This document shows positions 1,641 through 60,043 of a DNA stretch of 64,000 nt, in pieces. Location: the NCBI RefSeq assembly GCF_001194135.2, contig NC_068986.1, positions 1,353,772 to 1,417,771 of the forward strand. Direction: 5' to 3'. The translations under genes and the position numbers were made by a program. Below the pieces are notes generated by a model. It had not been told where the DNA came from and did no database searches. It saw only the letters and a list, made by a program, of their open reading frames with translations. Origin of the DNA: Octopus bimaculoides (taxonomy: Eukaryota). Position 1 is the first letter of the stretch. Every line of letters begins with the position of its first letter.

Positions 1641-1668
1641 TATATATATATATATATANNNNNNNNNN

Positions 1669-3703: not shown

Positions 3704-3916
3704 TTCTACTTTAGGCACAATGCCCGAAATTTTGGGGGAGGGGGTCAGTCAATTAGATTGACCCCAGTACGCAGCTGATACTTAATTTATCGACCCCAAA
3801 AAGTTGAAAGGCAAAGTCGACCTCAGCAGAATTTGAACTCAGAATGTAAAGACAAGACGAAATACTGCTAAGCATTTCGCCCAGCATGCTAACGTTTCTG
3901 CCAGCTCACCACCTTA
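3704..3916 (-). mobile_element. tRNA-headed SINE, family A (Meta-domain-like core), near full length
   Basis: A/B-box-like ctggcagaaacgttag / gagttcaaattc and core gcctttca.c.ttt.ggggtcgataaa.taagta. Other copies about 5176-5310, 25960-26160, 26490-26660, 35375-35595, 43895-44015, 56100-56270, 62905-63125. Confidence 0.85.
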
Positions 3917-6035: not shown

Positions 6036-6598
6036 NNNNNNNNNNNNNNNNNNNNNNNNNNNNNNNNNNNNNNNNNNNNNNNNNNNNNNNNNNNNNNNNN
6101 NNNNNNNNNNNNNNNNNNNNNNNNNNNNNNNNNNNNNNNNNNNNNNNNNNNNNNNNNNNNNNNNNNNNNNNNNNNNNNNNNNNNNNNNNNNNNNNNNNNN
6201 NNNNNNNNNNNNNNNNNNNNNNNNNNNNNNNNNNNNNNNNNNNNNNNNNNNNNNNNNNNNNNNNNNNNNNNNNNNNNNNNNNNNNNNNNNNNNNNNNNNN
6301 NNNNNNNNNNNNNNNNNNNNNNNNNNNNNNNNNNNNNNNNNNNNNNNNNNNNNNNNNNNNNNNNNNNNNNNNNNNNNNNNNNNNNNNNNNNNNNNNNNNN
6401 NNNNNNNNNNNNNNNNNNNNNNNNNNNNNNNNNNNNNNNNNNNNNNNNNNNNNNNNNNNNNNNNNNNNNNNNNNNNNNNNNNNNNNNNNNNNNNNNNNNN
6501 NNNNNNNNNNNNNNNNNNNNNNNNNNNNNNNNNNNNNNNNNNNNNNNNNNNNNNNNNNNNNNNNNNNNNNNNNNNNNNNNNNNNNNNNNNNNNNNNNN
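6036..6598. other. Assembly gap (largest); others at 1659-1668, 17162-17383, 19758-19786, 44279-44592, 48527-48800, 59850-60043
   Basis: N runs, mostly abutting (TA)n/(CA)n/(CT)n tracts. Confidence 1.
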
Positions 6599-11494: not shown

Positions 11495-11897
11495 CTCCTA
11501 TATATATGTACCTATGCATACAGGTAAACATGCATATACATGTAACATCCAACTGTTCACTCTCGGAATAGAGGATCTGTAACTATAATTTCTATGTTTT
11601 GAAATTATTTTTTATATTATTATTTAATGGTTTTATATGTAAAATTTAAATCAGTTTCAAATTATATAAATCCCATTTAATATAAATGTTAAAATAAATA
11701 GCAAAAAAAATCAATATTCTAAATGTAAAAAAAGAAATATTTATGTTACATTATTAATTATCAATGTATAATATTGAAACTGTATTCCCTAAGCTGTTCA
11801 TCATTATGTAATATTATCATTGCTATTATTTGCTAATTAACTTGCAGATGAATTATCAAATTTTCAGTGTCTAACATGCAGTTGTATTTTATCTCAG

Positions 11898-12951
11898 TTG
11901 CAGACCACATAAAACAGTCGTCGTCAATACCACCCCCTCCACCTCCACCAGCAGCCAGTTCTTATTGGAAGACTTCTTCATCTCGCTCCAACCGTCACTC
12001 AACGTGTGTAAGTTTCAACTCCTCCTCGTCTCCTTCTGCATCACCCCACAATTCTGCTTCTCTGAGCATTGGAGCCGGCTTGCCAGCACATACGATTTCA
12101 TTACCAGCTTCTGCAGTGAGAATTTTGCCCCCACTAACAACAAACATTATACCGCCAACACCTCCTCCACCACCGACACCACCTGCCCCATTCAGTTTCC
12201 CATATTTAGCAGAGAAATCTGCGACAATTCCAGGAGCTTCCAATAGTAATCAGCCATCGACTTCAAGTTCATTGAATGCTGCTGAAGAGGACAAGCAAAA
12301 TGCAGAACATTCTTCCACTTCTCCAGGTCAAAGAATGAATCCTTCACAGGTCCTTCCATCTTCTGACTATCGTAGCCGTCCAATAGAAGGTTCTGAAGAC
12401 TTCTATTCCTGGTCTAGCAAAGGAGATTGCAGTGGGCGTTCATCTATTGAGAAAATCCAGATAAATAAAAAGTTTGCTCGCAAAATGGATCCTGTGCAAA
12501 TTAGTAAAATTAACAATAACTACACAACCTCCATCCAAGTAGGTTCCAAGAAACTCTCAGAAGCCAATGCTGAGAAGCTGCCAAATCACTTTGATAAAGA
12601 AGAGGAGGAGATTGCTCGAATGACTTCAGACATGCCCAAATACTTACACTTAAGTAACCCGAGTAGAGAAATGGGCTGTTCTCCTTCGCCTCCACCGCCT
12701 CCACCACCACCACCACAATCTCTTATTGAAGAGCTGGAGAAAAGCTTTTCATCATCACAGGACACTGACAGCCTCTCTATGCAAAGTGATACTGATGACC
12801 TACCACCGCCACCACCTCCACCACCTCCTCCTCCTCCTCCGCCGCCGCTGCCTCCACCTCCCCTCTTTCAACATTCTTTACCATCATCATCCTCTCCTAT
12901 GTCTGCTGCTTGTGAAGTAAACAGAACTGCACCGTCATTGTCCAAATCAAG
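11898..12951 (+). CDS. ESPN: Espin/forked-like gene, large proline/serine-rich exon (phase 1 to 2)
   Basis: Corresponds to ORF 11867-12955. Two in-frame acceptors (exon start 11898 or 11904), donor aag|gtagat at 12952. Several poly-Pro tracts; phase 2 joins the WH2 exon. Confidence 0.88.
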
Positions 12952-13379
12952 GTAGATATACATACCTTCTAAATTTCTTTTCTTTTAACATTTTTCTGTT
13001 TTCTTTTTTAAAATAACAATTATCATAAATTTTCAACAGAAACATCATTATTAAGCATATCTTCATTAAATGCATATACATTCATATTTTTTCAACACCC
13101 TATTATTTAGTGACGATATTTACAATGTGATTCTAAAAGTCACTATGTAGTCTTGAAGTAAGTTTTTGCAGAGCTAAGTTTATAATTTAGCTTTGAATTC
13201 AAGCTCCAGCTGTAAGCGTTTCACTTCCAACTCTAATACACATCAGGAAGGTAAAGATCTGATTATTTTGCCTTTATCTATAAACATGAGACATTTGAGC
13301 GTGCCATACATAGTCGCACACATGCACACATATATTTAATTTGTTCTAATACATTTCCTAGTCATCATTTTCACATCCA

Positions 13380-17161: not shown

Positions 17162-19710
17162 NNNNNNNNNNNNNNNNNNNNNNNNNNNNNNNNNNNNNNN
17201 NNNNNNNNNNNNNNNNNNNNNNNNNNNNNNNNNNNNNNNNNNNNNNNNNNNNNNNNNNNNNNNNNNNNNNNNNNNNNNNNNNNNNNNNNNNNNNNNNNNN
17301 NNNNNNNNNNNNNNNNNNNNNNNNNNNNNNNNNNNNNNNNNNNNNNNNNNNNNNNNNNNNNNNNNNNNNNNNNNNNNNNNNNNTTTATGATTTTTCTCTA
17401 AAAATTCCTGAAATATAAAAACAAATGTAAATTATATTATTTAAAGCTAATGTGGTATTTAAGTTCACAAATATACATCAAAAAGTTTTATTGTACATTT
17501 TGTCAGTTAATGGGATAAGTGTTCAAAGAATGTATAAAAACTTAGGAAGATACAAAAAGGTTTCAGTAATAGCTATTAAACTGTGGATGGGGGCAGGCAA
17601 TGCAAATAGTTTTTTCTTTAATATGGCATTCCAAATAGCTTTAAAATCACTTCTCAAAATGAAAATGAAATTTAATGCAATCTGGTGTAATTTGTTTAAA
17701 GTTACATGATCCAATGTTCACAAAAAATAATTTGTCTCAAATTAGAATTAATTAACATTTTAATTTTTCTATCTTATTTAGATTTGAAATAAATATTTTA
17801 CAACAGAAGCAAATATTTTGTGGAATATAAAATATAAACCATGCAATTTTTTAATGAGAAAATAAATGGATTGAAGAAATTATATTCATCTATATTATGT
17901 TAGCAATATAGAAATAAAATGTATAATACACTTTTTTCATATTATGAATGTCTGCAAAGAGTAGAACAAAGAAATTATTGGGTGGTCAAAATATGACTCA
18001 GTTTTTATGTTGTTATTTTGTAGTTCAGATTAGCTTCTGTAGTATTTATTAATTAGAATCTAGACGAGTGTTTGTTTTTTTACTTTATTGATATCAATCT
18101 AAATTTTATTTTGGCTTAATATCTAAATTTCGCTATTTGAAATAGTGATAACAAAGATATTAACTATGGAGATAATAATTTATTTTCATAGAATAATCAT
18201 AAACCTAAACAATGGAGATTGAATAAACTGTTCTTTTATATGCCTGCATTTATTAATGGTTTGCTTTTATTTTGATGTTTAAACTGACTTGCATGTCTTG
18301 TAAAATTGATATCTGACAGTGTTAAAACCATAAACTTGTGATTTCCTATCCCATGCATTTGTTTTCTTATTTTCAAATTTATACCATGTTTTCATCAGAG
18401 GCTATATTTTGTGATTAGAATTAAAATGATTACAATGATGAAGATGGTGATGATAATAAAGTTATTGCTTACAAAGATCAATAGGAAGAAATGTACCCTC
18501 TTTGATGTTAACATGTCATTTGATAGCTGTATAAACTGATTGGTAACATGTCATTTGATGGCTGTACAAGCTAACTGTGAACCCATTGATACTAGAATAA
18601 CTAGAATTATAGAAATAAATTGTTTTGGTGGTTGGAGCAACAAACTAGTCCTCTTATTTTGTATTTTGTTTCCTTCCAAAGCCTGTCTTTCAGATAATTC
18701 AATTGATTGTCTTCATTAGATGATTACTCCATCCATTACTTTTAGAAGTCAGTTGCAGATTTTTGTATTTTCTAAATAAGTTGGTGATTGTCCTGTTTAG
18801 TTTTTCTGGTTGCTTTCAACAACATAGTGATGTTGACAACCATTTTGACGTAGATATAAGGTCTAGACTATCACACACATTTCTGCAGGTGCCTCAAAAG
18901 AACAACTGGTATGAATAAATCCATTTTCTGCATTTTTAATTACAGTAGCCTTGTATCTCATGAATTGACTAGGTTGGAAAAGTGAACCACAGAACTTTTA
19001 CTATAACTAATTTAGTCAGAAGAAAAAAGGAAGTAACCATAACCTTTTTAAGTTCTGCCAATCTGGTACGAGAAAATGATCCTCTAACTTGAGACCTGAA
19101 CCAAATGCTTGTGATGAAATGGATTCTATTCAATATATCCAATGACTTCATTGTGATATTAAACCAGGAAACTGATTAAGTCTTTTACTAAAGTGCAGAT
19201 CTGAGATCATCTGTGCTCTTTTGTATGTTTTTTTGGGGGGAATAGAAAATAAAAAAGCCTGTAATGCACCCTACATGCTTGGATGGGTTGTTTTGCTCTC
19301 TGTAAATAAGGATAAGGGGAACTCAGTTATCAACAAACAACAGCTTTAGGATAAGTTCTGTCTCTAGACTTTGTATGAACAGAGAAATAGTGGAAGTCAA
19401 AGATGCATTCCTCTACCTGGATCTTGAACATAGAAACTCTCTTTTGTATCATTGTCTGATACTAATAACATCAAATAACTGGAATTTAGGAAAAGATAGA
19501 GACATAAAGGAAATACAAACATTCCTATTGTAGTTAACTCAACTTTTCAGACTTCAACTAATTACTGGAAAAATACATCAACCAAACATTTTTTCCTGTT
19601 GACTCCTGGAGTTGTATTCACTTCCACATCTTCTCTGAGTTAGGTCCTGTTTCAAGATGTCACAGATATTTAATCTTGCAGCTAATGCTTTCATCAACCC
19701 GTATCCCTAA

Positions 19711-19757
<47 letters not shown>

Positions 19758-19786
19758 NNNNNNNNNNNNNNNNNNNNNNNNNNNNN

Positions 19787-24800: not shown

Positions 24801-25663
24801 ATCTATGGTTTGACAGAGTGGCAGAAATGGTAAAGTGCCATATTAAATTACAATGTTTAATTATTGACATCCTCTTAATATTCTCAAATTAAATCATGCT
24901 ACTTCAACAAGAACAGTAAAGGCTAATCTTCTGGAGGAAGTCAGAATAAGGCCAAAATATGTCTAGAGTTGTCTTCCATACTTGCCAAAGAAAGGAAAAT
25001 AATATTGATCATTGGCTAATATTGATATTATCTCATCCCTTTATTAGTAAATGTTAATATGTCACTTATCATTTTTCATACATTTCTTTCTTTTTTTATA
25101 TACATATTTAAGAATTATGAATTATAGGTAGATAACTTATACCAGGGTGAAGGGTGACAAGTTCTAATAAGCACTTTGTGGGAAGAATCATATGCAAAAT
25201 TCTTTAAAAAATATATTTCTTACAATTTAGTGGTATTACTTTGTATAGTAAGAAAATGTGGGGAAAATGGAAAAATTGTCATGTGAGGAAAATGGGAAAA
25301 TTTGATGGTGATGCATAATTTGCAAACAATATTACACATTTTTCTGAAAATATTAGATAGAAATTGGTTTAATAAATTTTATAAGGAAACTCTTAATTAA
25401 AAAAAATATGCTTAATCCTGTAATTTTCAGTATATTTTGTTGTTTTTTTTTTTTTCATGGGTATTTTATCTTTTCATATTATATACCCATATTATATACC
25501 CATAGAAATGTGTTCATAATCTTGATATGTCTTGGTAAATATCTTTGGTATGTTTCAAAATTATTCAAATATTGTTTCTTTATTCATAAATATACATTAA
25601 TCTTGTAAGACTGATTGTATTAATGTATTCTATTTAGGTTTTCCTGAACTGAAAGTGTAGAAG

Positions 25664-25955
<292 letters not shown>

Positions 25956-27022
25956 TTTAGGCAGTGAGCTGACAGAATTGTTGTCATGCTGAGTAAAATG
26001 CTTACTGGTATTTCGCCTGTCACTATGTTCTCAGTTCAAATTCCACCAAGGTTGACTTTGCCTTTCATCCTTTCGGGATCGATAAAATAAGTACCAGTTG
26101 TTGTAATCAACTCATCCTTTCCCTCCAGATTGCTGCCCTTGTGGCAAAATTGAAACCATTCTTATCATTATTATTAGATTAATGATTATGGTTTTTAGGT
26201 GTTTTATCAATAATTAGGTTTTAGAAAAGAAAACATTTTTTAAATATTTAATTTCTTCTATTTTATATTCTATTAATTGTAATTTAATTCTTATTAGTTA
26301 TTGGACACTAAGTTTGTTATTATTGTTAATACCCATAGAATAGTCTCAGTAATCTCTGTTGGGGACACTTGGGAATCTAACTGGAAATATAACTGGGTCC
26401 TACTGATAGGACCCTGTAGAGGAGGTGCCTGAGGATTCCACCCCAACAACCCTCCCAGGAATAGGGGACAGAAAAGATGGACGGTTGAGAATATAAGGAT
26501 AGTGGCAAAATCAGTTGAATGATACAAAATATTTTGTGGTATCTAATTACATATCTCAATGCTCTGAGTTCAAATCCTGCTGTGATCAACTTTGCTATTC
26601 ATCCTTTTGGGGTTGATAAAATGTACACCAGTTGAGTACTGAGATTGACTTAACTGGCTATGTCCACCTTCTACATTTGAATCCTTATGTTAGAAACAAA
26701 TATTATGTAACCTGAAGTTAGTACTAAACTAAAAGCAAAATATGTCATATTTTGCACCATTCAGATTTTCTAATCTGAGTGCAATCTGAACATCTATGGT
26801 CATGAACCTTCAGCCTTCTTCAGAGCCACATGCATTTTCTAGTTTATTCAAATTGAACCTCGATATTCCAATATGTATAAAGCATTAGAAAATATCAAAT
26901 AATTATGATTAAATTAAGTAATTAAGCAAAAAATATTACAGGTTAACTAACATTATTCTCTGGTCAAGCAATTCCAGATTCTTAACCATTGTCAGTGGAA
27001 GTATAGCTTTTATCATTCCTTG

Positions 27023-27073
<51 letters not shown>

Positions 27074-27904
27074 TAAAGCTGGAAAATGAAATTAGAAAAA
27101 ATATATTTGTTTATAATCATTTATTTATTCTTCAGTTTCATTTAAATTTAGTTGTTCTAGGATAAAATTATTGTATTTTTATTTATGTCTATTTTTTTTT
27201 TAAACTCTTGAACTTTTAAATGTGGTTGATTCCTTTGCTGGTACCAAGAAAGAGATATTTATTCTCTATTATTTCTGTAATTTTAGGTAATAAATAAGAT
27301 TTATAATTTCTCAAAGAAAATGTAAAAAAAAACGTCTTGTAATTGTGTCTACAGAAATTTTTTTTTGCATCTTTTTTTTTTTCTCTGTCATTCCAATGTC
27401 TTTCACATACTAATTTTTGGCCAAAGATGATGAAGTTTGAGATTTATAGTAGGTAAAGTTCAGTTTGAAGACTTCAAATAGATAAAAGAAAAATTTTCCA
27501 CCTGACAGCAAGTGTCTTCATCAATTTTCTTCTGTTTGATTTATATAATCAGAGTTATTCATTCACTCAAAACATTTTTATTTACTCTTTGAACTCTCTC
27601 ACAATTATCAAGATGTCTTCTATTCCATAAGAAGAAACAAATTCCTGCAAAAGTTGCATTTTAGAGCATTAATATTTATCTTTTTTAAAGTCAACTACTT
27701 CATAATAGCTTCCTTTAAAGTTATTTATCTCAAGTTCTTTTATTTTTTCATGTTTGTTTCTATTACAACATTAATACAACAATTTCTTTAGATATTTTCA
27801 AGGTATTTTTTGGAATTGCTTTTCTTTTTTGTCATTGTTTTTTTGTGTATGTTCTCATGTGCTTTTGTTTTACTGTTAATTATTTTTATTTTTTAAAGTT
27901 CCAG

Positions 27905-28448
27905 AAATTCACTGGGTTTCACTGTCAACGAAGCTAAAATGAACAGTCCGAGCAGAGCATCGATTCCAAACGCTTCCCCTGGAAGCTCCAGTGCTGATCT
28001 AATTGCAGAGATCACTGCAAAAGGAAAGTCTACTTTGAAGAGAACTCCACGACCAGAGCCTACTGTGATGATGTACACTGAAAAAGGCATGGTCCCTGTA
28101 ACAACTACCTCACCATTGTCAGCTGCAGTTTCTCCTACATATTCAACTGCAGCACCAACGACAACAACCACTACCACAACAACAACAACAGATATTAGCA
28201 CTTCTTCTAACAACAACAACAGTACTGTAACCAGTATTACTACTACCACTACTACCACTCGTAGTAGTAGTAATATCAAGTTGAATGACACAAGGACAAA
28301 TCCTACAACAAATTTCTCACCAAATGTATCAGCAAACACAAGCCATGTCATTACTGCCAGCACGCCTATTGCCACAATCACCAACAACACCAGTGAGGCA
28401 CCAACCCCAGTGCCAGCAGTTGCTCCACAGCTGCTGCCTAAAGCAAAG
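27905..28448 (+). CDS. ESPN: Espin/forked-like gene, WH2 exon plus Thr-rich linker (phase 2 to 0)
   Basis: Acceptor ccag| (alternative aaag| giving start 27899). SADLIAEITAKGKSTLKRT resembles the espin WH2 motif (ELLAEIKAGKSLKPT). Internal donor gcaaag|gtagga at 28449 is phase 0, matching the exon at 35107. Confidence 0.9.
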
Positions 28449-29834
28449 GTAGGAAATGGACACTATGAAGATACTGTTAGTAGTACTTCATTGCGTCGAC
28501 AGAAGTTTCTGGAAAGTCATAAAAATAATTCTCTTATTGAAATAGAAGAAGAGGTGTCTGTTAATGAAAAAACAATATCCCCAACACATACAGGGGACAG
28601 TAGTCAGGAAGACAGTGAGACAGATAAAAAACAAACAGAGGATACTTCAAAAGAAATAAAGTCAACAGTAGATAGTAAAACTTTTCATTCGGGAAATAGT
28701 TGGGAAAGTAAGCTTCTTCCTTCTGGAAGGAAATTACCAATGTTGAATGGAAAAATATCTACATTTTGGCAAATGGGAGGGAAGAGAAGCTTTGAACTTC
28801 CTAAAAAGAAGCATAATATTTTGTCTAGAATAAGTCAAGAAATCATAGAAATACCATCAGATGTTAATAATAAAAGTAATGAAACGAAGCAAAAGAAGAT
28901 TGATGACTGTGATGTAAAAACCTTATTGAAAAAGCCTAGTGTGGGTTTAAATGGGAAAGTAAAAGAAGCTACATTAGTTTCTCCACAAACCAATAATGGC
29001 ATAAAAAGGAATGTAAAAGAGTCTAGGTTAGGCCGACCAGAGACATTTAAAAGTCTAAGAGGAAGACTCAAAGAATCTAGTCTGTCATCAGAAACATCCA
29101 CAGAATCCAGATATACAAAGTCTTTGGGGATTTCTGAAAATAGATTCTCTTTACAATCTAGTTTTTCTTCAGAAACATCTACTGAATCCAAGAACTTTAG
29201 GTCAATGGATTCCTATGAGAGAAGATTAATAAAACAGTCCAGTATGTCTTCAGAAGCATCAACAGATTCTAGAAGTATAAGATTTGCTGATGTCTCTGAT
29301 GATGTAATGGTTAAAGATTATAGTATATCATCGGAAATGTCTCTAGATTCTAAGCATTTCAAATATGATGACAGTGAGACATCTGCTGGTAATGAGACTG
29401 ATGAGTCTGAATCAGATTATGCTTATGGAGGAGTTTATGATAGATGTAGTGGCCGAAGGATTGGACCGATCGTTAATGAAATCAAATACAAAGCAGAATC
29501 ATTAAAAAAGGAAACCTATAATTTTACAAAGAGCTTAGTTAACTTCAATCAAGGATTATATGTGGAAGATGTTGATGATGATTATGATGATTGCTATTAT
29601 TATTCTGACTACGATAACCAAAATTATATTGAGGAAAGGAACAAAACAATGAGAAACCACATGCTTGAATTTAATATATGTAAACAGCCAATAGAGCATC
29701 CATTGAAAACGAGGCAATTTAGAAGTCTTGTGGATAGAAGACATATTCAGATTGGCACCAACTTTAGAGATTACGGTCAGACAAGATATCAGAATTTGCC
29801 GAGGAAATCACATTATGAAACCTTCATTAATTGA
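28449..29834 (+). CDS. ESPN: Putative alternative terminal extension of the espin WH2 exon (461 aa, no bundling module)
   Basis: Frame stays open 1386 nt past the internal donor to TGA at 29832-29834 (ORF 27939-29834); AATAAA at 29941-29946. Confidence 0.72.
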   Translation, partial: VGNGHYEDTVSSTSLRRQKFLESHKNNSLIEIEEEVSVNEKTISPTHTGDSSQEDSETDKKQTEDTSKEIKSTVDSKTFHSGNSWESKLLPSGRKLPMLNGKISTFWQMGGKRSFELPKKKHNILSRISQEIIEIPSDVNNKSNETKQKKIDDCDVKTLLKKPSVGLNGKVKEATLVSPQTNNGIKRNVKESRLGRPETFKSLRGRLKESSLSSETSTESRYTKSLGISENRFSLQSSFSSETSTESKNFRSMDSYERRLIKQSSMSSEASTDSRSIRFADVSDDVMVKDYSISSEMSLDSKHFKYDDSETSAGNETDESESDYAYGGVYDRCSGRRIGPIVNEIKYKAESLKKETYNFTKSLVNFNQGLYVEDVDDDYDDCYYYSDYDNQNYIEERNKTMRNHMLEFNICKQPIEHPLKTRQFRSLVDRRHIQIGTNFRDYGQTRYQNLPRKSHYETFIN

Positions 29835-29940
29835 ATAGGTTTCTCATTTAAGCTTAGGAAATGATCGTTTATCCTTGTTAAGAACAATTCTTGTAGCTTA
29901 ATCCAAAGAAAATTTCATTAAAATGTCTAGAAATCTATTT

Positions 29941-29946
29941 AATAAA
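29941..29946 (+). promoter_or_regulatory. Candidate polyadenylation signal for the alternative espin terminal exon
   Basis: AATAAA about 107 nt after the stop at 29834; weak evidence alone in AT-rich DNA. Confidence 0.4.
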
Positions 29947-31709
29947 TTTATTGTATTTTTGCTGCCCGGTCCAGGAATCAAACCCACAATCATAAGGTTG
30001 TGAGTTTGATTCCTGGGCCAGAAAGTGCATTGTGTCCTTGAGCAAGGCACTTCATTTCACATTGCTCCAGTGTACTTAGCTGGCAAAAATGAGTACCAAC
30101 TGTTGCTTCAGCTCTTTCTCCTCCACCACCACCACCCACTCTTTCAGCTGTCACATCCTGGATGTTTCTCTGGGTCAAAGGTGAGAGGGTTCAGAGAGTG
30201 TCTGTCTATGTTTGTCCACATCTACAGCGTATGCTTCTACCAAGTTCTGCTTTCTTGCATACAACAATAATGGGATGGGGTTTAATATATATTTTCATTT
30301 TTTATTTCATTTCATTTTAGAAAGACTTTGATGAGGACTATTTTTTCTCCCGATAACATTATCCAGAATATATTTCAAAAGAGAAGAGAATTCATGATTC
30401 GGGAAAAATTTAACTTTAATTTCATTAATTACATTTACTCATTCTATCAAGTGTCAGTTTACAAAAGCTTTTTTTTTTTATATTTTACATGTCAAGACCC
30501 TCTCCTATGTTTTACTCCATTCTGGCTTCTTAAAACGAATTACAGAGCCCTTAACTTGTATCTTATGCATCATAACATTGATATGTTAATGACAAAAATC
30601 AATGTATTGTGCAATCACACGTTGCAAAAAGATTTGTAATTTATAATTTCACAATATTGATATTTTTTTTGTTATTTCTTTTATTTAGAAAGCTTTAAAA
30701 ATTAGATAGTATCATATTTTCAAAATTTATTAGAATTTATCTTGGAGAAATATAATAATGGATTCTTAAATTTACAATCATAGCAATATTCCATATGGAA
30801 GCAATATTTTATACTAATCATGTTTACTCTTCGAATTCACTGAGATTTAGTGATTAGTGAATATTTTCATAATTAAATACAGCAAACAAATATTTTTTTC
30901 TTGAAATCTGGGAATCAACTAAAAGAGAAATTTATCTCATGATCTTTAATAATTTTAGAATTAAAGGAAATATATTTTAGTCTTATATAGCTTGGACTTG
31001 AACCATTAAAAAGAAACTTTCCAGATGTTATGCGTATAATTTTGTTAATGCCAATTGTCTGAATGAAATGATACTTACATAAAAAATTAAAATTTTATTT
31101 GGGGAAAATGCATAGAAATAATAACAAAATTGGTGTTTATTTTTGTTGAAATCCATTGATTTGCTTGCTAATCTGAATATTAAAAAAAAACTTTTTCCTA
31201 TATCATGAAACTATTCTATGAGACAAGAAAAAAAAAAGTAATATTATGTGATTTGTGATACTGGTGAATGCATAAATATATTTGCAAGAATATATGTTGC
31301 AAAACTCTGAATTCTAAATAGTTTTCTATGAAATGGGATCTCTACTTATATGTAAATATTGGATATACCAGAAAGTTTCTTGATCTATGAAGCTATCGGT
31401 GTTGGTGCCCATTTCTGCATATAAAGGTAACACCTTTCTGGTTGTTTTTATCAAATCACTGCAAAGATTGTAATTCACTAGTAGTCACACAAGCAGTTGT
31501 GGTGATGTCACATCTTGATCCCTGATAAAGGAGCAGTAAAAATCAGGAACTCACAAAACATACTCTGTAACTTACAATATGTAATTGCTGTACAATGAAA
31601 TATTCTTTTATAATTTTCTTTTTTCTATTAATGATAACCACGCACCTTATTTTTGAAATCCTATTTTTAAGTTTAAAATTTTGTTCTTGTAGGAAAATTA
31701 ACTTTATAA

Positions 31710-31750
<41 letters not shown>

Positions 31751-34700
31751 TTATATATATATATATTTATTTATTTATTTATTAATATAATGGGTATGTT
31801 TTCAAAGTGCTGGACTACACAAGGTCAATGATTCAAACTTTGTCAGTCATTGTGCAGTGCTTTAAGAGAAGACAATATTCTGTTGCCACAGTCTGTCAGG
31901 TTTTCATTGGGTTCTACTTCCACTTTATAGTTGTATGATTAGCACCAAGAAAACCACAGATCTTTATTAGCCATTACTCCAGAAATATACAAATGTTGAA
32001 ATTGCCATCTCAAATATGATTGCATGGAAAATGTATATAAAACTGTAAAAAAAATGTTTTGTAAAAATTAAAAAAATTACCATTAGTTAGCATATATTCA
32101 TTAAGATTTTTATAAAATTAAATTTACTGAGAAATGTTCAGTTCATCTTTATTAGTAATTAATAGCTTTTTGAAACCTGCTTATTTTATGAGATCTTGGT
32201 GCATAATGTTCAAGATTAATTAGAAATGTATGCTTCATTAAAGTCTATTATCTGATACTAATTATTTTCAAGTTAGAAACTTCAGACTGGATTAGTTAAT
32301 TGATATTCAGTAAATTTAATTACTTTGTTGTTAAATTTATCTCTCAAAAACAAGTCATATTTTGAGTATATTATATTAAATTAAATATTTAAATTTGCAT
32401 CTAGTTTGAGAATTAAGATTGATTAAAGAAACAACAAGAGAAGTTTATATGCAGTTGCTCAACCTGCTAGAAATGGCCATCAAATCTCCTTAAATTTCCC
32501 TTGGAAGACAACCTTACCTTCTTAAAACAAGAAGGGACACATTGGATAATATAGACCTGGATATATGAAAATTGGGATGGTCAAAACTGGTACATCTATG
32601 ATCATAGGTTTGCTCTGTCAGAATTGACTTGTGAAGGATTGAAAGAATACATATTTTAAGCAATGGTTAGAGACTGGTTACCTAAAATAAAGAATCCTAA
32701 AAATGTGTTCTCTTTTTTGGGGAATTCTCTATTGTATTCCAACTTTTCCTAATTCATAAAATAAAATCAAAAACTTGGATTGGTTTAATCAACTGATACT
32801 AGTTTCTCCCGATATTTTCTTAAAGAGACCACAGTTGAGAATCCCATCTTTACAGTACTATCTGTGTGTGCTTTTAAAGCAGACAAGGGTGTGATGCCAT
32901 GCACACACACTGGAACATTCCATAAATAACCTTATAAGTGACAAGGTATGCAGTACATCCATAACTGTGTCCAATGCAAGTCAATATAAGAAGATTGTAT
33001 TCATATAAGCATAATGTCTGAAATTTATTTTAAAATATATTACGGAATTCAATTAAAACTGTAAACTTATTTTCTAAATTATTTCTAATTTAGAAAAATA
33101 TATTTTCATACATCCTAAAATCCTGATGTATCTTTGTACATGTTTAAAATCAGGACCTCTTAATTAAAGAGCTGCTAAACATCTTCCTTAACATATTTCT
33201 AATGAAATGCACTGTCTATTTATTTTGATTAAATTTGAAAATGATCAAGTAAATTGACTAACAACTACATTATTGAGATGATGTCTGGAATATTACAAAA
33301 GGTTCTTTCATCTAATTATGAAAGAACAATTAAATTTATAGTTTTTTTAGTTTAATATATGAATGTTATAAAACAAATTGTTTGTTATCATAAAACCAGT
33401 AATAACTTCAGGTGGGTTGGTATCTCAAGGATTTACCTTTTCTAAACTATTGTTGGGTTAAAATTGAAATTCTTCAAAAAAGAAAACACAGTTTAATATT
33501 GAAGTGTTTCATTGTAACAGCATTATATATTTAAAGAATATTTTCAGAAGCAATGTTTTCATAGCAAGTATGTATGTTGTGTATTCTGAGTGGTCACTTG
33601 ACAGAACTCATTATAAAGCAATGACTTTCACTTTCTCTGTTAAATATAACTTAGAAATTTTAACAGCATGTCACCACAGTTCATTAATCTCATGAACATT
33701 CAGGGTAAAAACACTGTTTGAATGCTTTGCCGTTTGGAGAAAAGAAAGCACAGTTGATAGCTTCACCTTCCTGAAAAGCATGTCACTTCGAGAAATGTTA
33801 GATAATAGTACAATAGTTGCAAGTCTCTTATATTCAGTTCACTTAAATTCCAACATTTTAAATTTCACAGTTTTTTTAGGGGGGGGGGGGGTTTGTCACA
33901 AAACCACGTTGTCCATTTATTTTCGCTCAGTTTCCTAATTAATAATTTTTGAGTATAACTGTATATTATTTAATTTTAGTTAGCCATTTCTCATTTGTGG
34001 CTTTCTTTTTCTCTCATTTACCATTCTTGATTCAATACACTGAACACACTTATATATGTCAATGCTTTTTAGAGATCAAATTTTTAAATCTGTAGTTACT
34101 GTGTGTTTGTCTAGATGCAAACATTACACTAGATATCTTTAACTTAAAAGTTTTGGGCCCTAGGCAACACCTGCAAACTTGGAGTGTTTGAACTCTGAAT
34201 TATAGGTTTAAAAGTTGATAACAAAATGTCAACCTATACATTAGTAAATAGAGAATGCTCACTTTAAAATTTAGGTCTTAAGTCTTATAATAACATTTTC
34301 ATTCATAACAGACTCTATTATCTAATTTATGATATATTCTTTTATAAAGTGAGCCTCTCTTGTGTCCCCAGATAAAACTTAATGCTGTGTCCTCAGACAA
34401 GACGTATAATTCTATATTTCCCAGTTTACTTGTGAATAATCACTCTGATATTATAGGTAAATTACCTGTAATAGATTTGTATTTTATCCAGAAGATCTAA
34501 CTTGCATCAGCTTAAATCAATAGAATCTGCAGATAAGAACTATACTACATAAGATTTAGTGCTAATAAAATGATTAAAAATAAATATATTTTCTTTTAAT
34601 ATAAATTAATATATGACAATTTAATAATTTTCTGTAATTAACATATTACAAAATTACATAATTTATTTCTTGAATTTTAAATTTATCAAACTGTTTCTTC

Positions 34701-35106
34701 ATATAACATACACTTTTGAAATTTCCACCACACACACAGTAATGTTAAATACATCAAAGATATATGCATAATTTTTAGTTACCTTATTCTGATGGGTATA
34801 CTGTATCACCCCTTCATGTTGCAAGAAACAACTAAATAGTTTGACATCCAGAAGGGCATCCAGCCATAAAATGCAACCTTAAAAATGTCCTACATACATG
34901 TATACCTCCTCACACACACACACATATAGGTATAAAAATATAATTGCACAATACATCTGTACATTAGTTCCTATACACTGCTAATATACATATATGTTGT
35001 AATGTAATGGATGTATGAAATATTGATGCTATTGTTTTATAATCTCCTTTAACATATGTTACTATGTTCTTTCTTAAAAACACATTCTATTCCTGTTTCT
35101 TATTAG

Positions 35107-35274
35107 GAACGATCAGAGCGAACAATACTGGAGGGTAACTTTGATCCTAAGAATTTCTTAGATCAAGTTCCTGATAAGGATGCTGCTGGGCGAGTCATTC
35201 CTCCATGGAAACGGCATGTATTAGCACGGCAGATGGCAGAGAAGGCAAAATCAGAAGAAGAAGAAAAGAAAAGA
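35107..35274 (+). CDS. ESPN: Espin actin-bundling module exon 1: ERSERTILEGNFDPKNFLDQVPDKDAAGRVIPPWKRHVLARQMAEKAKSEEEEKKR
   Basis: Acceptor ttcttattag|, donor aga|gtaaaa, 168 nt phase 0/0; strong resemblance to vertebrate espin [20 protein letters not shown]...EEEEQRR. Confidence 0.93.
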
Positions 35275-36190
35275 GTAAAATAAGTTTTCAATACTCTGCA
35301 TGCTTTTTTAAATTCTTTCATGAATCATTTTTGGTTAAATATCTTAATGTCGGAGATGAGATATTAATATGATCTTAAAGACAGTAAGTTAGCAGAATTG
35401 TTAGCATGCCAGGCAGTGTTTTGTGGCATATCATCCATCTTTACATTCTGATTTCAAATTCCACCCGCCGAGGTCAACTTTGCTTTTCATCCTTTCAGAG
35501 ACATTAAATTAAGTACCAGTTAAACACTGGGGTCAATGTGAACAACTGGCCTCCTCCCCACAAATTCCAGGCTTTGTGCCTATAGTAGAAAGGATTGTTA
35601 ATGTGATAATGGTTTTTGCTCATCTGCAGAAACAACAAAAGGTTTAATATTTACACCTACATGGCTGTATCATTATGAAGTTCTTAGAGCCATAGTAGAA
35701 AACACTAGCCCAAAGTGCCTGCAAGAACCCTGTGCCAGTACCATGTAAAAAACACTTGTGCTAGCGCCATATAAATGTACACATGTCAATGCAATGTTAA
35801 AAGGACCCAGCACACACTGTAAAGTGGCTGGCATTGGGCAGGGCATCCAGCCATAGAAACCCAGCCAACCCAGACTTGAACCTGGTACAGCTCTCCAGTT
35901 TACTGGCTCTAGTCGAACTGTCCAACTCATGCCAGCAGGGAAAGCAAATGTTAAATGAAGATGTATGTATATGTCTGTGTGTGCATGTACGTGTTTGTGT
36001 GTTTACCTATCTGTATATATATGTACATTTCTGTGTGTGTGTGTTTGCATGTATTTTGATATTGCACAGCTTTGCTTTTCACTGCTGCCTAAGTAAAAAT
36101 GTTTTATGGTATTCACATTCTTTGTCGACATTATGACCAGCCATTCTGTGCTTTCAAAGTCTAGTGGAATAAAAGATCCATTACTATGTA

Positions 36191-36470: not shown

Positions 36471-36550
36471 CAGGCAGAAGAAGAAGCCCGTTTTAAAAAT
36501 GTTCCCGCTTGGAAACGAGCTCTTATGCAGAAGAAATCAGCCGAAAACAA
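36471..36550 (+). CDS. ESPN: Espin actin-bundling module exon 2: QAEEEARFKNVPAWKRALMQKKSAEN
   Basis: Acceptor ttcttcag|cag (NAGNAG), donor aa|gtaagc, phase 0 to 2; resembles espin [21 protein letters not shown]. Confidence 0.93.
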
Positions 36551-38134: not shown

Positions 38135-38261
38135 AGCTTCTCAAATTCAAAAGGAGACCAAATCACAACTCTTTGCAGCACCCAAAGTAGCCTCTCGTGG
38201 TGTAGTTAATGGAGAAGGCAACATGATACCTCCTTGGCAAAATGATTTGAAGGGAAAATAA
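38135..38261 (+). CDS. ESPN: Espin terminal coding exon: KASQIQKETKSQLFAAPKVASRGVVNGEGNMIPPWQNDLKGK*
   Basis: Acceptor gtcttttcag|, phase 2 start, TAA at 38259-38261; the third PPW motif resembles espin's terminal LAPWQRQ. The six exons total 2076 nt = 692 codons with no internal stop. Confidence 0.88.
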
Positions 38262-43432: not shown

Positions 43433-44722
43433 CTGTAGAAATGAAACAGTGATTTGAAATGATGAAATTTTATAATTTCAGAACAGACAGTAATCTCTTA
43501 AGAAATGTTTACAAATGAAATATATATATATGCAAGCAATTAATTTTGTAACTGAACGAATTTGAATAGATAAACTGGTGTAATAGTGAAGCAGAAACCC
43601 GTGTCCATAGCTCTCCTCTTGGTTTATATAAATAAATACATACATAAAAGACTGGTCTTTTATTTATTGGCATGTCAATTTCAGAGAAATTCTTGAGTCT
43701 TGAGACTGCCTCACCTTCTCATTTGGAGTTGGTCACAATTGCCACCAGGAGTTTGTTTATCTTCTCTCAAAGTGAAAATAATTTCAATCTCTTTGTATTT
43801 GTTCAACACATGCATTTCATCATTGTGGATGTTTGGAATCCTGCATAAGCATTGGATGCTTAACCACAATGGATCATTAGTGAATACACTATTGCACCCA
43901 AAAAGATGAATGGTAAAGTCAATCTCTGCTGAATTTGAACTCAGAATGTAGCGGCAGACGAAATACCACTAAGCATTTCGCCTGGCATGGTAATGTTTCT
44001 GCCAGCTCGCTGCCTTATCACAGGCTCCAACCTGTTCTGGCAAGGTTTCTACAGCTGGATGACCTTCCTAATGCCAACCACTCTGAGAGTGTAGTGGGTG
44101 CTTTTACGTGCCACCGGCACAGGGTCCAGTTAGGCAGCACTAGCATCTATATATATATATATATATATACTTTTATTGTTTTCATTTACTTGTCTCAGTC
44201 AATTGACTGTGTCCATGCTGGAGCACTGCCTTTTAGTTGAAGAAACCCGACCCCTGGACTTATTTTTTGTAAGCCTGGNNNNNNNNNNNNNNNNNNNNNN
44301 NNNNNNNNNNNNNNNNNNNNNNNNNNNNNNNNNNNNNNNNNNNNNNNNNNNNNNNNNNNNNNNNNNNNNNNNNNNNNNNNNNNNNNNNNNNNNNNNNNNN
44401 NNNNNNNNNNNNNNNNNNNNNNNNNNNNNNNNNNNNNNNNNNNNNNNNNNNNNNNNNNNNNNNNNNNNNNNNNNNNNNNNNNNNNNNNNNNNNNNNNNNN
44501 NNNNNNNNNNNNNNNNNNNNNNNNNNNNNNNNNNNNNNNNNNNNNNNNNNNNNNNNNNNNNNNNNNNNNNNNNNNNNNNNNNNNNNNNNNNNATCCACTC
44601 ACAAGGCTTTGGTTGGCCTGTGGCTATAGCAGAAGACACTTGCCCAAGGTGCCACACAGTGGGACTGAACTCGGTACCATGTGGTTGGGAAGCAAGCTTC
44701 TTACCACACAACCATGCCTGTG

Positions 44723-48421: not shown

Positions 48422-49105
48422 TATCCGGTCATCCCATAATTTCTGTCCGATTTTACTTTTGTTAAAATTGAATGAAACTTAATAGTATTTCAGAATGTCT
48501 AATGGAATTAAAAATTATTTTTATGCNNNNNNNNNNNNNNNNNNNNNNNNNNNNNNNNNNNNNNNNNNNNNNNNNNNNNNNNNNNNNNNNNNNNNNNNNN
48601 NNNNNNNNNNNNNNNNNNNNNNNNNNNNNNNNNNNNNNNNNNNNNNNNNNNNNNNNNNNNNNNNNNNNNNNNNNNNNNNNNNNNNNNNNNNNNNNNNNNN
48701 NNNNNNNNNNNNNNNNNNNNNNNNNNNNNNNNNNNNNNNNNNNNNNNNNNNNNNNNNNNNNNNNNNNNNNNNNNNNNNNNNNNNNNNNNNNNNNNNNNNN
48801 TGATAAGCTCCTTGAGGCATTACTTGAAGAAAATCCTACATTATCAGTTGAGGAATTGGCGATAAAGCTTAGTTCAAACCATACAACTGTTCATCGTCAT
48901 CTTCAACAACTTGGAAAGGTTCCTAAACTTGGAAAATGGGTGCCTCATGGATTGCCCGAAAGCAACCGCAAATCCCGAGTTGACATCAGCTTTTCTCTCC
49001 ATTCTCACAAACTCATTTCACCCTTTTTGGATAGACTTGTGACTAGTGACGAAAAATGGATTTTCTATCGAAATGTTAAACGTCGTAAACAGTGGCTTGG
49101 TAAAA
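48422..49105 (+). mobile_element. Mariner transposon, 5' half (left TIR + transposase fragment across a gap), in MRPS18A intron 1
   Basis: ta-tccggtcatcccataatttctgtccg TIR-like start; HTH region, GKWVPHGL (WVPHEL motif), VTSDEKW (first catalytic D); truncated at about 49105. Confidence 0.9.
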
Positions 49106-57368: not shown

Positions 57369-57534
57369 CTGAAAAATAAGAAAAGATGTTTTCACCCATG
57401 ATACAATTCAGAAAAAAATCAGTGATGGAAATTGAGGTGAATACACAGTGGACAACAATTCTCTTGCCTTCAGGTCTTGGAGAGGTGGAGTAGACACTTT
57501 TACAGTCAAACCTTACAGTCTTTCCATCCTCAAA

Positions 57535-58035
57535 CTCACTGGCATTAACGAGCAATTTAAAACTGGCTACTCTTGGGAGCTCCTCTACACTAATGACCTT
57601 GTAGATATTGTTGAATCACTACCACAACTAGAGAAGAAATTTCAGATAGGGGAGCAATAATTGGAATCAAAGGGCCTTGGAGTTAATTTAGCAAAGACCA
57701 AAGTTCTAATAAGTAGGAAAACAGACAAATAACAGAGCTCCACATTCAAAGAGATGGCCCATTCTCAATATGTAGAAAAGATGTCGGGAGAAGCTCCATA
57801 TGGTGTACCCAGTGCAAGTTATGGACACATAAGAGGTGCAGCAGTATCACTGGAAGACTGATAGAGGGAGTAATCTTTACATGTGGCAGATGTACAAGTA
57901 CATTAAACACCAGGAATGTACAAAAACTAGATTCTCTCAAATGTCAGGGGGACATTAGAAGTAGTTGACAATTTCCATTACTTATGTTACCAGGTTAGCA
58001 GTGGTGGAGGTTGTTCTGAAAACAAAGCTGCTAGA
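57535..58035 (+). mobile_element. Degraded second copy of the same RTE RT/PHD region
   Basis: GYSWELLYTNDL (decayed YADD), WPFSICRK, CTQCKLWTHKRCS; stops and frameshifts. Confidence 0.85.
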
Positions 58036-58799
58036 AAAAGCACCTATGTGCTGGTGCTGCAAAACAGCACCCAATACATTCTGTAAAGTGATTGGGTGTT
58101 AGGAAGGGCATCCAGCTGTAGAAACCAAGGCAAAACAGACAAATGAAGCCTGGGCAGTTCTTCAGCTGACCAGCTCCTGTCAAACCATCCAACCCATGCC
58201 AACATGGAAAATGGACGTTAAATGATGATGATGATGATGATGATGATGATGTTGAAGTTCCTAGAACCCATTTTCATGATTGATTGAAATATGATTCAAG
58301 GATCAAATGTCAAACTTGCTATCTTAAGATTCCAATTTTGAATATTGTCATAAAATCAGAAAACTTATTGGCAAAGAAAATTATAAAGCCACTGACAATA
58401 GTAAAGATGGATGAGATGGTTGAATAAGGAATTGAATACTTCATGGAATCTAATTTGGAGTGAACTGTGCCAAAATTGAATATACAAAGTGATTGACTTT
58501 TGCTTCTGGCTCCTCGATATTGATAAAATATAGTTAGTAACAAGATAAGATCAATCATTTTGCAACCTACCTTCTCATAAAATTCCACATTATTTCTAGT
58601 TCAAAGAAGTCAATATAGTAAAGCAACAACAAAACCCTACAGGCAGCTAAATGTAATTTACTCTCAAAATAGTCTTTTATGATTTTGCATAATTGCATAC
58701 AGGCCTTCAGGACTCTCTAGCATTATATACAGGGTTATTCAAAAAGAATGACCCAGTTTCATTATGCAATATTTTAATAAAGAAAAACAGTAGAAAACT

Positions 58800-59666
58800 C
58801 CACTGATGCTATATTTCTGGTTAGACAGCTGCAAGAGAAATACCTAATCAAAGATAAACCTCTGTACCTGGCTTTCATCAACATGAAGAAAGCCTTTGAC
58901 AAGGTCCCCCGATCCCTTATCTGGTGGTCAATGAGGAGATTAGGGATAGATGAATGGCTAGTGAGAGCTGTGCAAGCCATGTACAAGGACTCTGTCAGTA
59001 AGGTGAGGGTTGGCAACAAGTACAGTGAAGAATTCCAAGTAGGGGTAGGGGTCCACCAAGGATCAGGCCTCAGCCCACTCTTATTCATCATAGGCCTCCA
59101 GGCAATAACAAAGGAATTCAAGACAGGATGCCCCTGGGAGCTCCTCTATGCTGATGACCTTGCTCTAACTGCTGAGTCACTATCAGAACTAGAAGAGAAG
59201 TTTCAGGTGTGGAAGCAAGGATTAGAATCAAAGGACCTTAGAGTCAACCTAGCTAAAACCATAGTCCTAATAAGTAGGAAGGCAGACAAACCACAAATGC
59301 CTTCAGGTAGATGGCCCTGCTCGATCTGTAGAAAAGGCGTAAGTAGAAACTCCATAAGATGTACCCAGTGTAAGCTATGGGCACATAAGAGGTGCAGTAA
59401 TATCAAAGGAAGGCTAACTGAGAAGATAGTGTTTGTATGTGGCAGATGCTCAGGGGCAGTAAACACTGAAAATGTGCATAAAACAACTTCTGTCACATTC
59501 CAGGGAGAAAAACTAGAAATAGTTGATAGCTTCCATTATCTAGGGTACCAAGTCAGTAGTGGGAGTGGATGCTCTGAGAGTGTAGCTGGTAGAATAAGAA
59601 TAGCCTGGGCAAAGTTCAGAGAGCTCCTACCTCTGCTGGTGAGAAAGGGCCTCTTGCTCAGAGTAA
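58800..59666 (+). mobile_element. RTE-clade LINE reverse-transcriptase fragment, open frame, with embedded PHD finger (antisense in TEKT1 intron)
   Basis: STDAIFLVRQLQEK...KKAFDKVPR...GVHQGSGLSPLLF...YADD, then a C4HC3 motif; truncated at both ends. Confidence 0.95.
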
Positions 59667-59814
59667 AAGTTTCCGTCTACCAAATCCACTCACAAGGCTT
59701 TGGTCAGCCCAAGCCTAAAGTAGAAAACATTTGCCCAAGGAGCTATGCAGTGGGACTAAACTTAGAAACCATGTTGTTGGGAAGCAAGCTTCTTACCACA
59801 CAGCCACACTTGTG

Positions 59815-59849
<35 letters not shown>

Positions 59850-60043
59850 NNNNNNNNNNNNNNNNNNNNNNNNNNNNNNNNNNNNNNNNNNNNNNNNNNN
59901 NNNNNNNNNNNNNNNNNNNNNNNNNNNNNNNNNNNNNNNNNNNNNNNNNNNNNNNNNNNNNNNNNNNNNNNNNNNNNNNNNNNNNNNNNNNNNNNNNNNN
60001 NNNNNNNNNNNNNNNNNNNNNNNNNNNNNNNNNNNNNNNNNNN

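What the first reader, a model, noticed from the sequence alone, without database searches (positions are those of the whole stretch)
27905..35274. Espin C-terminal switch: bundling module versus a 461-aa unrelated tail from one composite exon
Seen: the WH2 exon has a phase-0 donor (aag|gtagga, 28449) in frame with the espin actin-bundling exons (35107, 36471, 38135). The same frame also runs 1386 nt further without a stop to TGA 29834, with AATAAA at 29941. In DNA this AT-rich, 461 stop-free codons by chance is very unlikely, so the extension is probably coding. Known: vertebrate espin isoforms vary mainly at the N-terminus and share the C-terminal bundling module. Inference: this gene may make both a bundler (692 in-window codons) and a WH2-containing non-bundler (1029 in-window codons) by alternative donor use and intronic polyadenylation, which could act as a scaffold or antagonist in microvilli-rich cells. 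Alternatively, a later phase-0 GT in the extension (gag|gtgtct at about 28555, aaa|gtaaaa at about 28959) could splice to 35107 and give a longer cassette.
Basis: partly seen in the sequence, partly recalled or inferred. Interest (0 to 1): 0.8.

Follow-up and report, generated by a model that had tools for sequence, protein, structure and literature searches.

The report
Espin-like gene with two alternative tails
In this octopus-like espin gene, the exon carrying the actin-monomer-binding motif can either be spliced to the usual actin-bundling end or be read straight on into a 461-residue tail; comparison with a related species shows the tail is genuine protein-coding sequence, but no RNA data were available to show that both versions are made.

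Summary
One frame is open from the acceptor at 27905 to TGA at 29832-29834 (645 codons, the longest in the window). A phase-0 donor AAG|GTAGGA lies at 28448/28449, and AATAAA lies at 29941. Three downstream exons (35107-35274, 36471-36550, 38135-38261) join in frame.

The 461-codon extension is real coding sequence. A 3.5-kb genomic contig from a related species keeps the whole frame and the same stop. dN/dS is 0.105, 52 of 73 substitutions are at third positions, and all indels are multiples of three. Intron-level divergence ends at 27905 and does not return at 28449.

The two-isoform reading is well supported but not shown. The 28449 donor is the best-scoring GT in the exon. The bundling exons can only be read in frame from a phase-0 donor. 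Skipping the exon breaks the frame.

No transcript data could be reached. The tail has no detectable relative, domain or confident fold. It contains four 27-residue serine-rich repeats. Assignment to the espin family rests on architecture and motifs only.

Verdict: a probable composite terminal exon with intronic polyadenylation, giving an espin form without the bundling module. It is a new variant of a known kind and of moderate interest.

The parts
11904..12951 (+). Upstream proline-rich exon of the same gene. It holds four poly-proline runs. It starts with two bases of a codon and ends with two bases of a codon.
   Evidence: A 367-codon open frame at 11852-12952, with acceptor ttgcag|AC and donor AG|gtagat. 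It joins exon part A in frame. No Pfam hit.
27905..28448 (+). Common part of the composite exon (181 codons). It carries the WH2-like motif and a Thr/Asn-rich linker. It ends on a codon boundary.
   Evidence: Identity to the related species is 95.7%, against 87.6% in the intron just upstream. dN/dS is 0.21 and both indels are 3n.
27993..28046 (+). WH2-like actin-monomer-binding motif, ADLIAEITAKGKSTLKRT.
   Evidence: Read from the translation. It is invariant in the related species. The match is at motif level only: the Pfam WH2 model did not score at E<=1.
27939..27941 (+). In-frame ATG 34 nt inside the exon. It is a possible start codon for a short isoform made from an internal promoter.
   Evidence: conserved. 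Use as a start codon is an inference by analogy with small espin (PMC2132824).
28449..28450 (+). GT of the internal 5' splice site AAG|GTAGGA, phase 0.
   Evidence: It is the highest-scoring GT in 27905-29834 (8.5 bits on an approximate donor matrix). It is identical in the related species.
28449..29834 (+). Read-through extension: 461 codons plus TGA (29832-29834). It encodes a Ser/Lys/Glu/Asp-rich tail with no detectable relatives.
   Evidence: dN/dS is 0.105 in this frame and about 1.3 in the other two. Substitutions by codon position are 12/9/52. The three indels are all 3 nt. The stop is at the same place in the related species. The only hit among 1.84 billion representative proteins is the orthologue P0001.
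29055..29378 (+). Four tandem 27-residue repeats, each with the core S-x-S-S-E-x-S-x-x-S followed by a basic and aromatic stretch.
   Evidence: Exact 27-residue spacing of the motif at tail residues 211, 238, 265 and 292. The block 29142-29372 has 8 synonymous and 0 non-synonymous changes.
29941..29946 (+). AATAAA, 107 nt after the TGA. It is the candidate poly(A) signal of the read-through form.
   Evidence: The hexamer is intact in the related species. The 233 nt after the stop are 92.7% identical, against 87.6% for the intron (p=0.008).
35107..35274 (+). First exon of the bundling-module-like C-terminus (56 codons, phase 0 to 0). It contains IPPWKRHVLARQ and a Glu/Lys-rich stretch.
   Evidence: Weak Phostensin_N match, below the cut-off (E=0.0086). 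That is a lead, not a test.
36471..36550 (+). Second exon of the same module (80 nt). It contains VPAWKRALMQKK.
   Evidence: The donor is AA|gtaagc.
38135..38261 (+). Last exon of the same module. It contains IPPWQNDLKGK and ends in TAA (38259-38261).
   Evidence: The joined reading 11904..12951 + 27905..28448 + these three exons has a single stop, at the very end.

Best explanation
The stretch 27905-29834 is a composite exon of an espin-like actin-cytoskeleton gene.

If the internal 5' splice site at 28448/28449 is used, the WH2-containing part is joined to three small exons (35107, 36471, 38135). These encode a 124-residue C-terminus that resembles the espin actin-bundling module.

If that site is not used, the transcript reads on. 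Translation continues for 461 more codons to TGA at 29834, and the RNA probably ends at the poly(A) signal at 29941. The protein then keeps the proline-rich and WH2 parts but lacks the bundling module. In its place it carries a conserved, mostly disordered tail with no known relatives. The tail has four 27-residue serine-rich repeats and a helical, tyrosine- and acid-rich end.

Shown: the tail is translated sequence under purifying selection, continuous with the WH2 part. Inferred: both forms are made, the choice lies between splicing and intronic polyadenylation, and the tail-bearing form cannot bundle actin through the usual module.
For: Coding status of the extension:
- A 3458-nt contig of a related species (L001) is colinear with window 26590-30067.
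- Identity is 87.6% in the intron, 95.7% in part A and 94.7% in the extension.
- The intron has 20 indels, 14 of them not multiples of three. The exon has 5, all multiples of three.
- dN/dS is 0.105 in frame and about 1.3 out of frame. 52 of 73 substitutions are at third positions. The p-values are 3.5e-18 and 4e-11.
- Both the proximal (28449-28988) and distal halves show the third-position bias.
- The frame in L001 is open from the acceptor to the same stop.
- Divergence per 100 nt falls at 27905 and does not rise again at 28449.

Splicing to the bundling exons:
- 28449 is the best-scoring GT in the exon, is phase 0 and is conserved.
- The proline-rich exon joined directly to 35107 gives a frameshift and an early stop, so these exons need a phase-0 donor such as 28448.
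- The joined reading has one stop, at its end.

3' end of the read-through form:
- AATAAA at 29941 is conserved, and the 233 nt after the stop diverge less than the intron.

Literature:
- The bundling module is described as shared by all espin isoforms (PMC3953818).
- Five of six Drosophila forked isoforms share the C-terminal peptide, so one does not (PMC2132824).
Against: No RNA evidence was reachable for the 28448-35107 junction, for read-through or for the poly(A) site. The protein databases returned no spliced product of either form.

The bundling exons could not be compared with a second species, because L001 ends at 30067.

Conservation of the donor cannot be separated from conservation of the codons it lies in. 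Zero differences in 28440-28479 is not significant.

Family assignment is weak. There is no Pfam WH2 hit, and the only Pfam hit on the module is below its cut-off. No named relative was found.

The donor matrix I used was written from memory for vertebrate-like sites, not trained on this organism.
Confidence: 0.62

Rival explanations
1. There is a single product. The whole of 27905-29834 is the constitutive last coding exon. The three downstream exons that resemble the bundling module are not joined to it; they are relics or belong to another transcript.
For: The tail is clearly translated and ends in a conserved stop followed by AATAAA. No evidence for selection on the downstream exons could be obtained, because L001 ends at 30067.
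Against: The three downstream exons have good acceptors, matching phases and a single terminal stop. They carry three spaced PxW[KQ] motifs in a Glu/Lys-rich setting, as recalled for espin. They have no upstream in-frame start of their own except a Met late in the first exon. The strongest donor of the big exon sits exactly on the one phase that reads them.
Confidence: 0.08
2. The spliced (bundling) form uses a later phase-0 donor inside the extension, such as 28554. A piece of the tail is then a cassette shared by both forms.
For: GAG|GTGTCT at 28554 is phase 0, and its GT is kept in the related species.
Against: It scores 5.6, against 8.5 for 28449. Even if this donor is used, selection on the distal tail up to the TGA still requires read-through.
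Confidence: 0.1
3. The tail-bearing protein is made mainly as a short product from an internal promoter in the upstream intron. Translation would start at ATG 27939, giving 631 residues (WH2 plus tail). It would then be a small-espin-like isoform rather than a C-terminal switch of the long protein.
For: The in-frame ATG at 27939 is conserved and has A at -3. The intron stretch 27590-27789 diverges less than the rest of the intron. Vertebrate espins use internal transcription starts (PMC3953818, PMC2132824).
Against: The frame is also open and conserved from the acceptor at 27905, which has a good polypyrimidine tract and joins the proline-rich exon in frame. This rival concerns the 5' end and does not exclude the switch.
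Confidence: 0.15
4. The extension is not coding. The open frame is a chance or compositional effect in an intron or a 3' untranslated region.
For: There are no relatives, no domain and no confident fold.
Against: The chance of the open frame is about 1e-15 or less. The frame and stop are kept in a second species, dN/dS is 0.105, substitutions favour third positions, and indels are 3n only.
Confidence: 0.02

Closest known systems
Vertebrate espin (ESPN) isoforms
   Same: The same order of parts appears in the window: proline-rich peptides, a WH2-like motif, then a C-terminal module of about 120 residues rich in Glu, Lys and Arg, with spaced PxW[KQ]R motifs. Several products come from one gene (PMC3953818, PMC2132824).
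   Different: Vertebrate isoforms are described as differing at the N-terminus and all sharing the C-terminal bundling module (PMC3953818). Here the variation proposed is at the C-terminus and removes that module. The 461-residue tail has no counterpart.
Drosophila forked proteins
   Same: This is an invertebrate espin relative with several transcripts. [quoted passage not shown] 1993). That is a precedent for a product without the module.
   Different: No similarity between the octopus tail and forked could be tested here. The way the forked exception arises was not examined.
Espin-like protein (ESPNL)
   Same: It is a long espin paralogue (1005 residues in mouse). It has ankyrin repeats and a proline-rich peptide but only a 27-residue piece of the bundling module (PMC3953818). 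It is therefore an espin relative with a divergent C-terminal region.
   Different: ESPNL is a separate gene, not an alternative end of the same gene. No sequence comparison with the tail was possible.
Composite terminal exons with intronic polyadenylation (for example the immunoglobulin mu secreted versus membrane choice)
   Same: An internal 5' splice site competes with a downstream poly(A) site in the following intron, and this gives two C-termini. This is established general knowledge, not tested here.
   Different: The mechanism is inferred here from sequence signals only.

Membership tests
Espin / forked family | A C-terminal actin-bundling module of about 116 residues with the forked-homology peptide | tested here: inconclusive
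   The three exons encode 124 residues with IPPWKR, VPAWKR and IPPWQN motifs and a Glu/Lys-rich centre. No database hit even at E<=10. The Pfam hit is Phostensin_N at E=0.0086, below its cut-off.
Espin / forked family | A WH2 motif upstream of the module | tested here: inconclusive
   ADLIAEITAKGKSTLKRT fits the LLxxI...G...LK[KR][VT] pattern by eye and is invariant between the two species. The Pfam WH2 model gave no match at E<=1.
Espin / forked family | Proline-rich peptides in the large isoforms | tested here: met
   Exon 11904-12951 carries four poly-proline runs, one of them more than 20 residues long.
Espin / forked family | N-terminal ankyrin repeats in the largest isoform | not tested
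   No ankyrin-coding exon was identified in the window. The 5' part of the gene probably lies upstream of the window.
Espin / forked family | Binding and bundling of actin filaments | not testable with these tools
   This needs recombinant protein and sedimentation or microscopy assays.
Composite terminal exon with intronic polyadenylation | An internal 5' splice site inside an exon whose read-through stays in frame and ends in a stop | tested here: met
Composite terminal exon with intronic polyadenylation | A poly(A) signal shortly after the read-through stop | tested here: met
   AATAAA at 29941 lies 107 nt after the TGA and is conserved. Its use is not shown.
Composite terminal exon with intronic polyadenylation | Both the spliced and the read-through polyadenylated RNAs are observed | not testable with these tools
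   No transcript data were reachable. The protein collections returned only one genomic ORF.

The most novel reading that the evidence does not exclude
Octopods make an espin that keeps the parts binding actin monomers, profilin and (upstream) myosin III, but swaps the bundling module for a lineage-restricted, strongly constrained 461-residue tail. The four 27-residue serine/acid repeats of that tail would act as a phosphorylation-controlled docking platform. The cell could then switch one gene between a filament cross-linker and a non-bundling regulator or antagonist by choosing between splicing and intronic polyadenylation.
Probability: 0.3. Interest if true: 0.6.

Novelty: new variant of a known kind. 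Interest (0 to 1): 0.42.

Why it matters
Espins set the length and stiffness of microvilli and of sensory hair bundles. In vertebrates every isoform is described as carrying the same bundling module. A conserved isoform without that module would be a natural separation-of-function variant. It could show what the WH2, proline-rich and ankyrin parts do on their own, and how an invertebrate with elaborate mechanosensory and chemosensory epithelia tunes actin bundles.

The tail would also be a clean example of a long, constrained coding sequence with no known relatives, attached to an old gene. The mechanism (a composite exon with intronic polyadenylation) is ordinary. Automated gene models may already list both forms, which limits the surprise.

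Tried and rejected
Searches that found nothing useful:
- Word-indexed search of 5.8 billion proteins with the tail: only the orthologous genomic ORF P0001.
- The same search with the 124-residue module: nothing at E<=0.001 or at E<=10. A typical vertebrate match of about 44 bits would not be significant at that database size. The null therefore says little. I cannot tell whether cephalopod proteomes are in the collection.
- Exact look-up of the window's 631-residue ORF: not on record.
- Exhaustive phmmer search of the tail against 1.84 billion representatives: only P0001.
- Pfam on exon part A plus the tail, and on the proline-rich exon: no family.
- PDB sequence searches: none.
- AlphaFold2 on the tail alone: mean pLDDT 41. 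It is disordered except for helices at tail residues 339-369, 390-407 and 435-460. I therefore ran no fold search, because its matches would be meaningless.
- Tandem Repeats Finder did not see the 81-nt period of the protein repeats at DNA level.
- Rfam on the whole window: no family.
- Literature: nothing on espin in cephalopods, and the run accession of L001 appears in no paper.
- A search for in-phase cassette exons between 12952 and 27905 with good splice signals: none.

Ideas considered and rejected:
- L001 as a transcript. It carries 1.3 kb of upstream intron and has no poly(A) at its end. Its upstream end lies in a dispersed repeat. It is best read as a genomic contig, although unspliced RNA cannot be excluded.
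- A nested independent gene on the minus strand. The minus-strand frames over the exon are short and full of stops.
Full report
**1. What is in the sequence**

On the + strand a single frame is open from 27897 to 29831, followed by TGA at 29832-29834. At 645 codons it is the longest open frame in the 64-kb window on either strand. The next longest is a 367-codon proline-rich frame at 11852-12952.

A good acceptor (tttttaaagttccag|A) puts the exon start at 27905. The first 181 codons carry a WH2-like motif (ADLIAEITAKGKSTLKRT, 27993-28046) and a Thr/Asn-rich linker. At 28448/28449 there is a GT on a codon boundary, in the context AAG|GTAGGA. The frame then continues for 461 codons. AATAAA lies at 29941, 107 nt after the stop, and ATTAAA lies at 29917.

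Downstream there are three small exons with good acceptors: 35107-35274 (168 nt), 36471-36550 (80 nt, donor AA|gtaagc) and 38135-38261 (ending in TAA). Read from the 28448 donor they give a 124-residue C-terminus with one stop, at the end.

- The second small exon ends at 36550.
The difference between the two forms (337) is the same.

**2. Is the open frame more than chance?**

With the local or window-wide base composition, 461 stop-free codons have a probability of about 2e-18 to 1e-15. The other five frames of the same stretch contain 23 to 76 stops.

**3. Is the extension coding?**

This was the key test, and it could be done.

A protein search with the tail found exactly one relative, P0001, at 94% identity. 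It is encoded on a 3458-nt contig from a public sequencing run (L001). That contig is colinear with window 26590-30067 at about 90% identity. It includes 1.3 kb of the upstream intron. Its upstream end lies in a dispersed repeat with other copies in the window. I read it as a genomic contig of a related species.

Region by region:
- Identity: 87.6% in the intron, 95.7% in exon part A, 94.7% in the extension and 92.7% in the 233 nt after the stop.
- Indels: 20 in the intron, 14 of them not multiples of three. There are 5 in the exon (2 in part A, 3 in the extension), all multiples of three. At the intron rate, 21 indels would be expected in the extension (p=1e-6).
- Differences per 100 nt: they fall from 8-37 to 2-11 exactly at 27905 and do not rise at 28449.
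- Codon positions in the extension: 12, 9 and 52 substitutions at positions 1, 2 and 3 (p=4e-11).
- dN/dS (Nei-Gojobori): 0.105 in the reading frame, against about 1.3 in the two other frames. The deficit of non-synonymous changes has p=3.5e-18.
- The proximal part (28449-28988) and the distal part each show the third-position bias on their own.
- The last three 77-codon blocks have dN/dS of 0.00-0.05.
- The related species has the frame open from the same acceptor to the same TGA.

The extension is therefore translated sequence under purifying selection, and it is continuous with the WH2 part. The intron-like character does not begin at 28449.

**4. Is there a switch?**

Three sequence facts favour it:
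- On an approximate donor matrix (frequencies from memory, so indicative only), 28449 scores 8.5. That is the best of all GTs in 27905-29834. It is in phase 0 and is identical in the related species. The other phase-0 sites are weaker: 28554 scores 5.6 and 28941 scores 5.1.
- The upstream proline-rich exon (11904-12951) ends two bases into a codon. It joins 27905 in frame. Joined directly to 35107 it gives a frameshift and an early stop. The three C-terminal exons can therefore only be read after a phase-0 donor, which exon part A provides.
- The read-through stop is followed by a conserved AATAAA, and the sequence after the stop diverges less than the intron (p=0.008).

Selection right up to the TGA means the read-through product must exist. 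The intact, in-phase module exons suggest that the spliced product exists as well.

The missing piece is RNA. None of the tools gave access to transcripts of this organism. The protein collections contained no spliced product of either kind. The module exons could not be compared with a second species, because L001 ends at 30067.

**5. What is the gene?**

The order of parts in the window fits the description of espins (PMC3953818, PMC2132824):
- a long exon with four poly-proline runs;
- a WH2-like motif;
- a C-terminal module of about 120 residues rich in Glu and Lys, with three spaced PxW[KQ] motifs (IPPWKRHVL, VPAWKRALM, IPPWQNDLK).

That is a lead, not a test.

The tool-based tests were inconclusive:
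- Pfam found no WH2 match.
- The only Pfam hit on the module was Phostensin_N, below its cut-off (E=0.0086).
- The large protein searches returned nothing for the module, even at E<=10. For a 44-bit relationship in 5.8 billion sequences, this is expected.

I therefore call it an espin-like gene by architecture.

**6. What is the tail?**

- It has no relative other than its orthologue among 1.84 billion representative proteins.
- It has no Pfam family and no PDB sequence match.
- AlphaFold2 on the single sequence gave mean pLDDT 41. The model is disordered, apart from helices at tail residues 339-369, 390-407 and 435-460.
- Its composition is 14.5% Ser, with abundant Lys, Glu, Asp, Thr and Asn.
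- It contains four exactly spaced 27-residue repeats (29055-29378). Their core is S-x-S-S-E-x-S-x-x-S, followed by a basic and aromatic stretch. This region has no non-synonymous change between the two species.
- Further on come an acidic tyrosine cluster (YVEDVDDDYDDCYYYSDYDNQNY) and a basic end.

The serine/acid pattern looks like a cluster of sites for acidophilic kinases. That, and any partner binding, is speculation.

**7. How it most likely works**

The model is a composite exon:
- Recognition of the 28449 donor removes 28449-35106 and yields the bundling form.
- Failure to use the donor lets the polymerase reach the poly(A) signal at 29941. This yields a form that keeps the upstream parts and the WH2 motif but lacks the module. 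[quoted passage not shown]
- Such a protein could still bind actin monomers and upstream partners without cross-linking filaments.
- Whether it antagonises the bundler, localises differently or binds actin through the tail is unknown.
- A conserved in-frame ATG at 27939, and a less diverged intron stretch at 27590-27789, leave room for short forms made from an internal promoter, as in small espin.

**8. Comparison with what is known, and novelty**

Vertebrate espin isoforms are described as all sharing the C-terminal module (PMC3953818). In Drosophila, five of six forked isoforms share the homologous C-terminal peptide, so one does not (PMC2132824). The paralogue ESPNL keeps only a 27-residue piece of the module (PMC3953818).

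Composite terminal exons with intronic polyadenylation are a common mechanism. I found no paper on espin in cephalopods. I could not check whether automated gene models already list both forms.

I rate this a new variant of a known kind, with moderate interest. The coding status of the tail is solid. The switch is probable. The function is open.

Noticed in passing
window 29968-30019: A 22-nt inverted repeat (91% complementary, 8-nt loop) begins 22 nt after the AATAAA at 29941. It is also present in the related species' contig. It might be part of a short interspersed element or a structure near the cleavage site.
   Followed up: partly
window 27590-27789: This intron stretch, 100-300 nt upstream of the exon, shows 8-9 differences per 100 nt to the related species. 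Most of the rest of the intron shows 10-37. It could be a conserved non-coding element, such as splicing control or an internal promoter ahead of the in-frame ATG at 27939.
   Followed up: no
window 57436-60076 (+): Remnants of a non-LTR retrotransposon: a reverse transcriptase domain (RVT_1, E=8e-19) with a PHD finger, and a second PHD-finger frame at 57717-57965. The element is interrupted by an assembly gap at 59850-60043.
   Followed up: partly
window 26563-26620; also 3786-3843, 35447-35495, 43897-43945, 62977-63053: A short dispersed repeat with at least five copies in the window, on both strands. The related species' contig breaks off inside the copy at about 26590.
   Followed up: partly
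window 25648-25989: A long triplet-repeat array that reads as poly-His/Tyr, poly-Ser or poly-Ile depending on the frame. It lies in the intron upstream of the composite exon.
   Followed up: no
window 1659-1668, 6036-6598, 17162-17383, 19758-19786, 44279-44592, 48527-48800, 59850-60043: Seven runs of N (assembly gaps). None lies between 27905 and 38261, so the gene model discussed here is not affected by gaps. Many (TA/CA)n-type microsatellites flank the gaps.
   Followed up: yes
window 35107-35170 (residues 30-50 of the C-terminal module): The start of the bundling-like module gives a weak match, below the cut-off, to the Pfam family for the N-terminus of phostensin. Phostensin is an actin-associated protein, and taperin has regions similar to it. 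The N-terminal part of taperin is reported to bundle actin (PMC12139522). The match may reflect a shared short actin-binding motif.
   Followed up: partly
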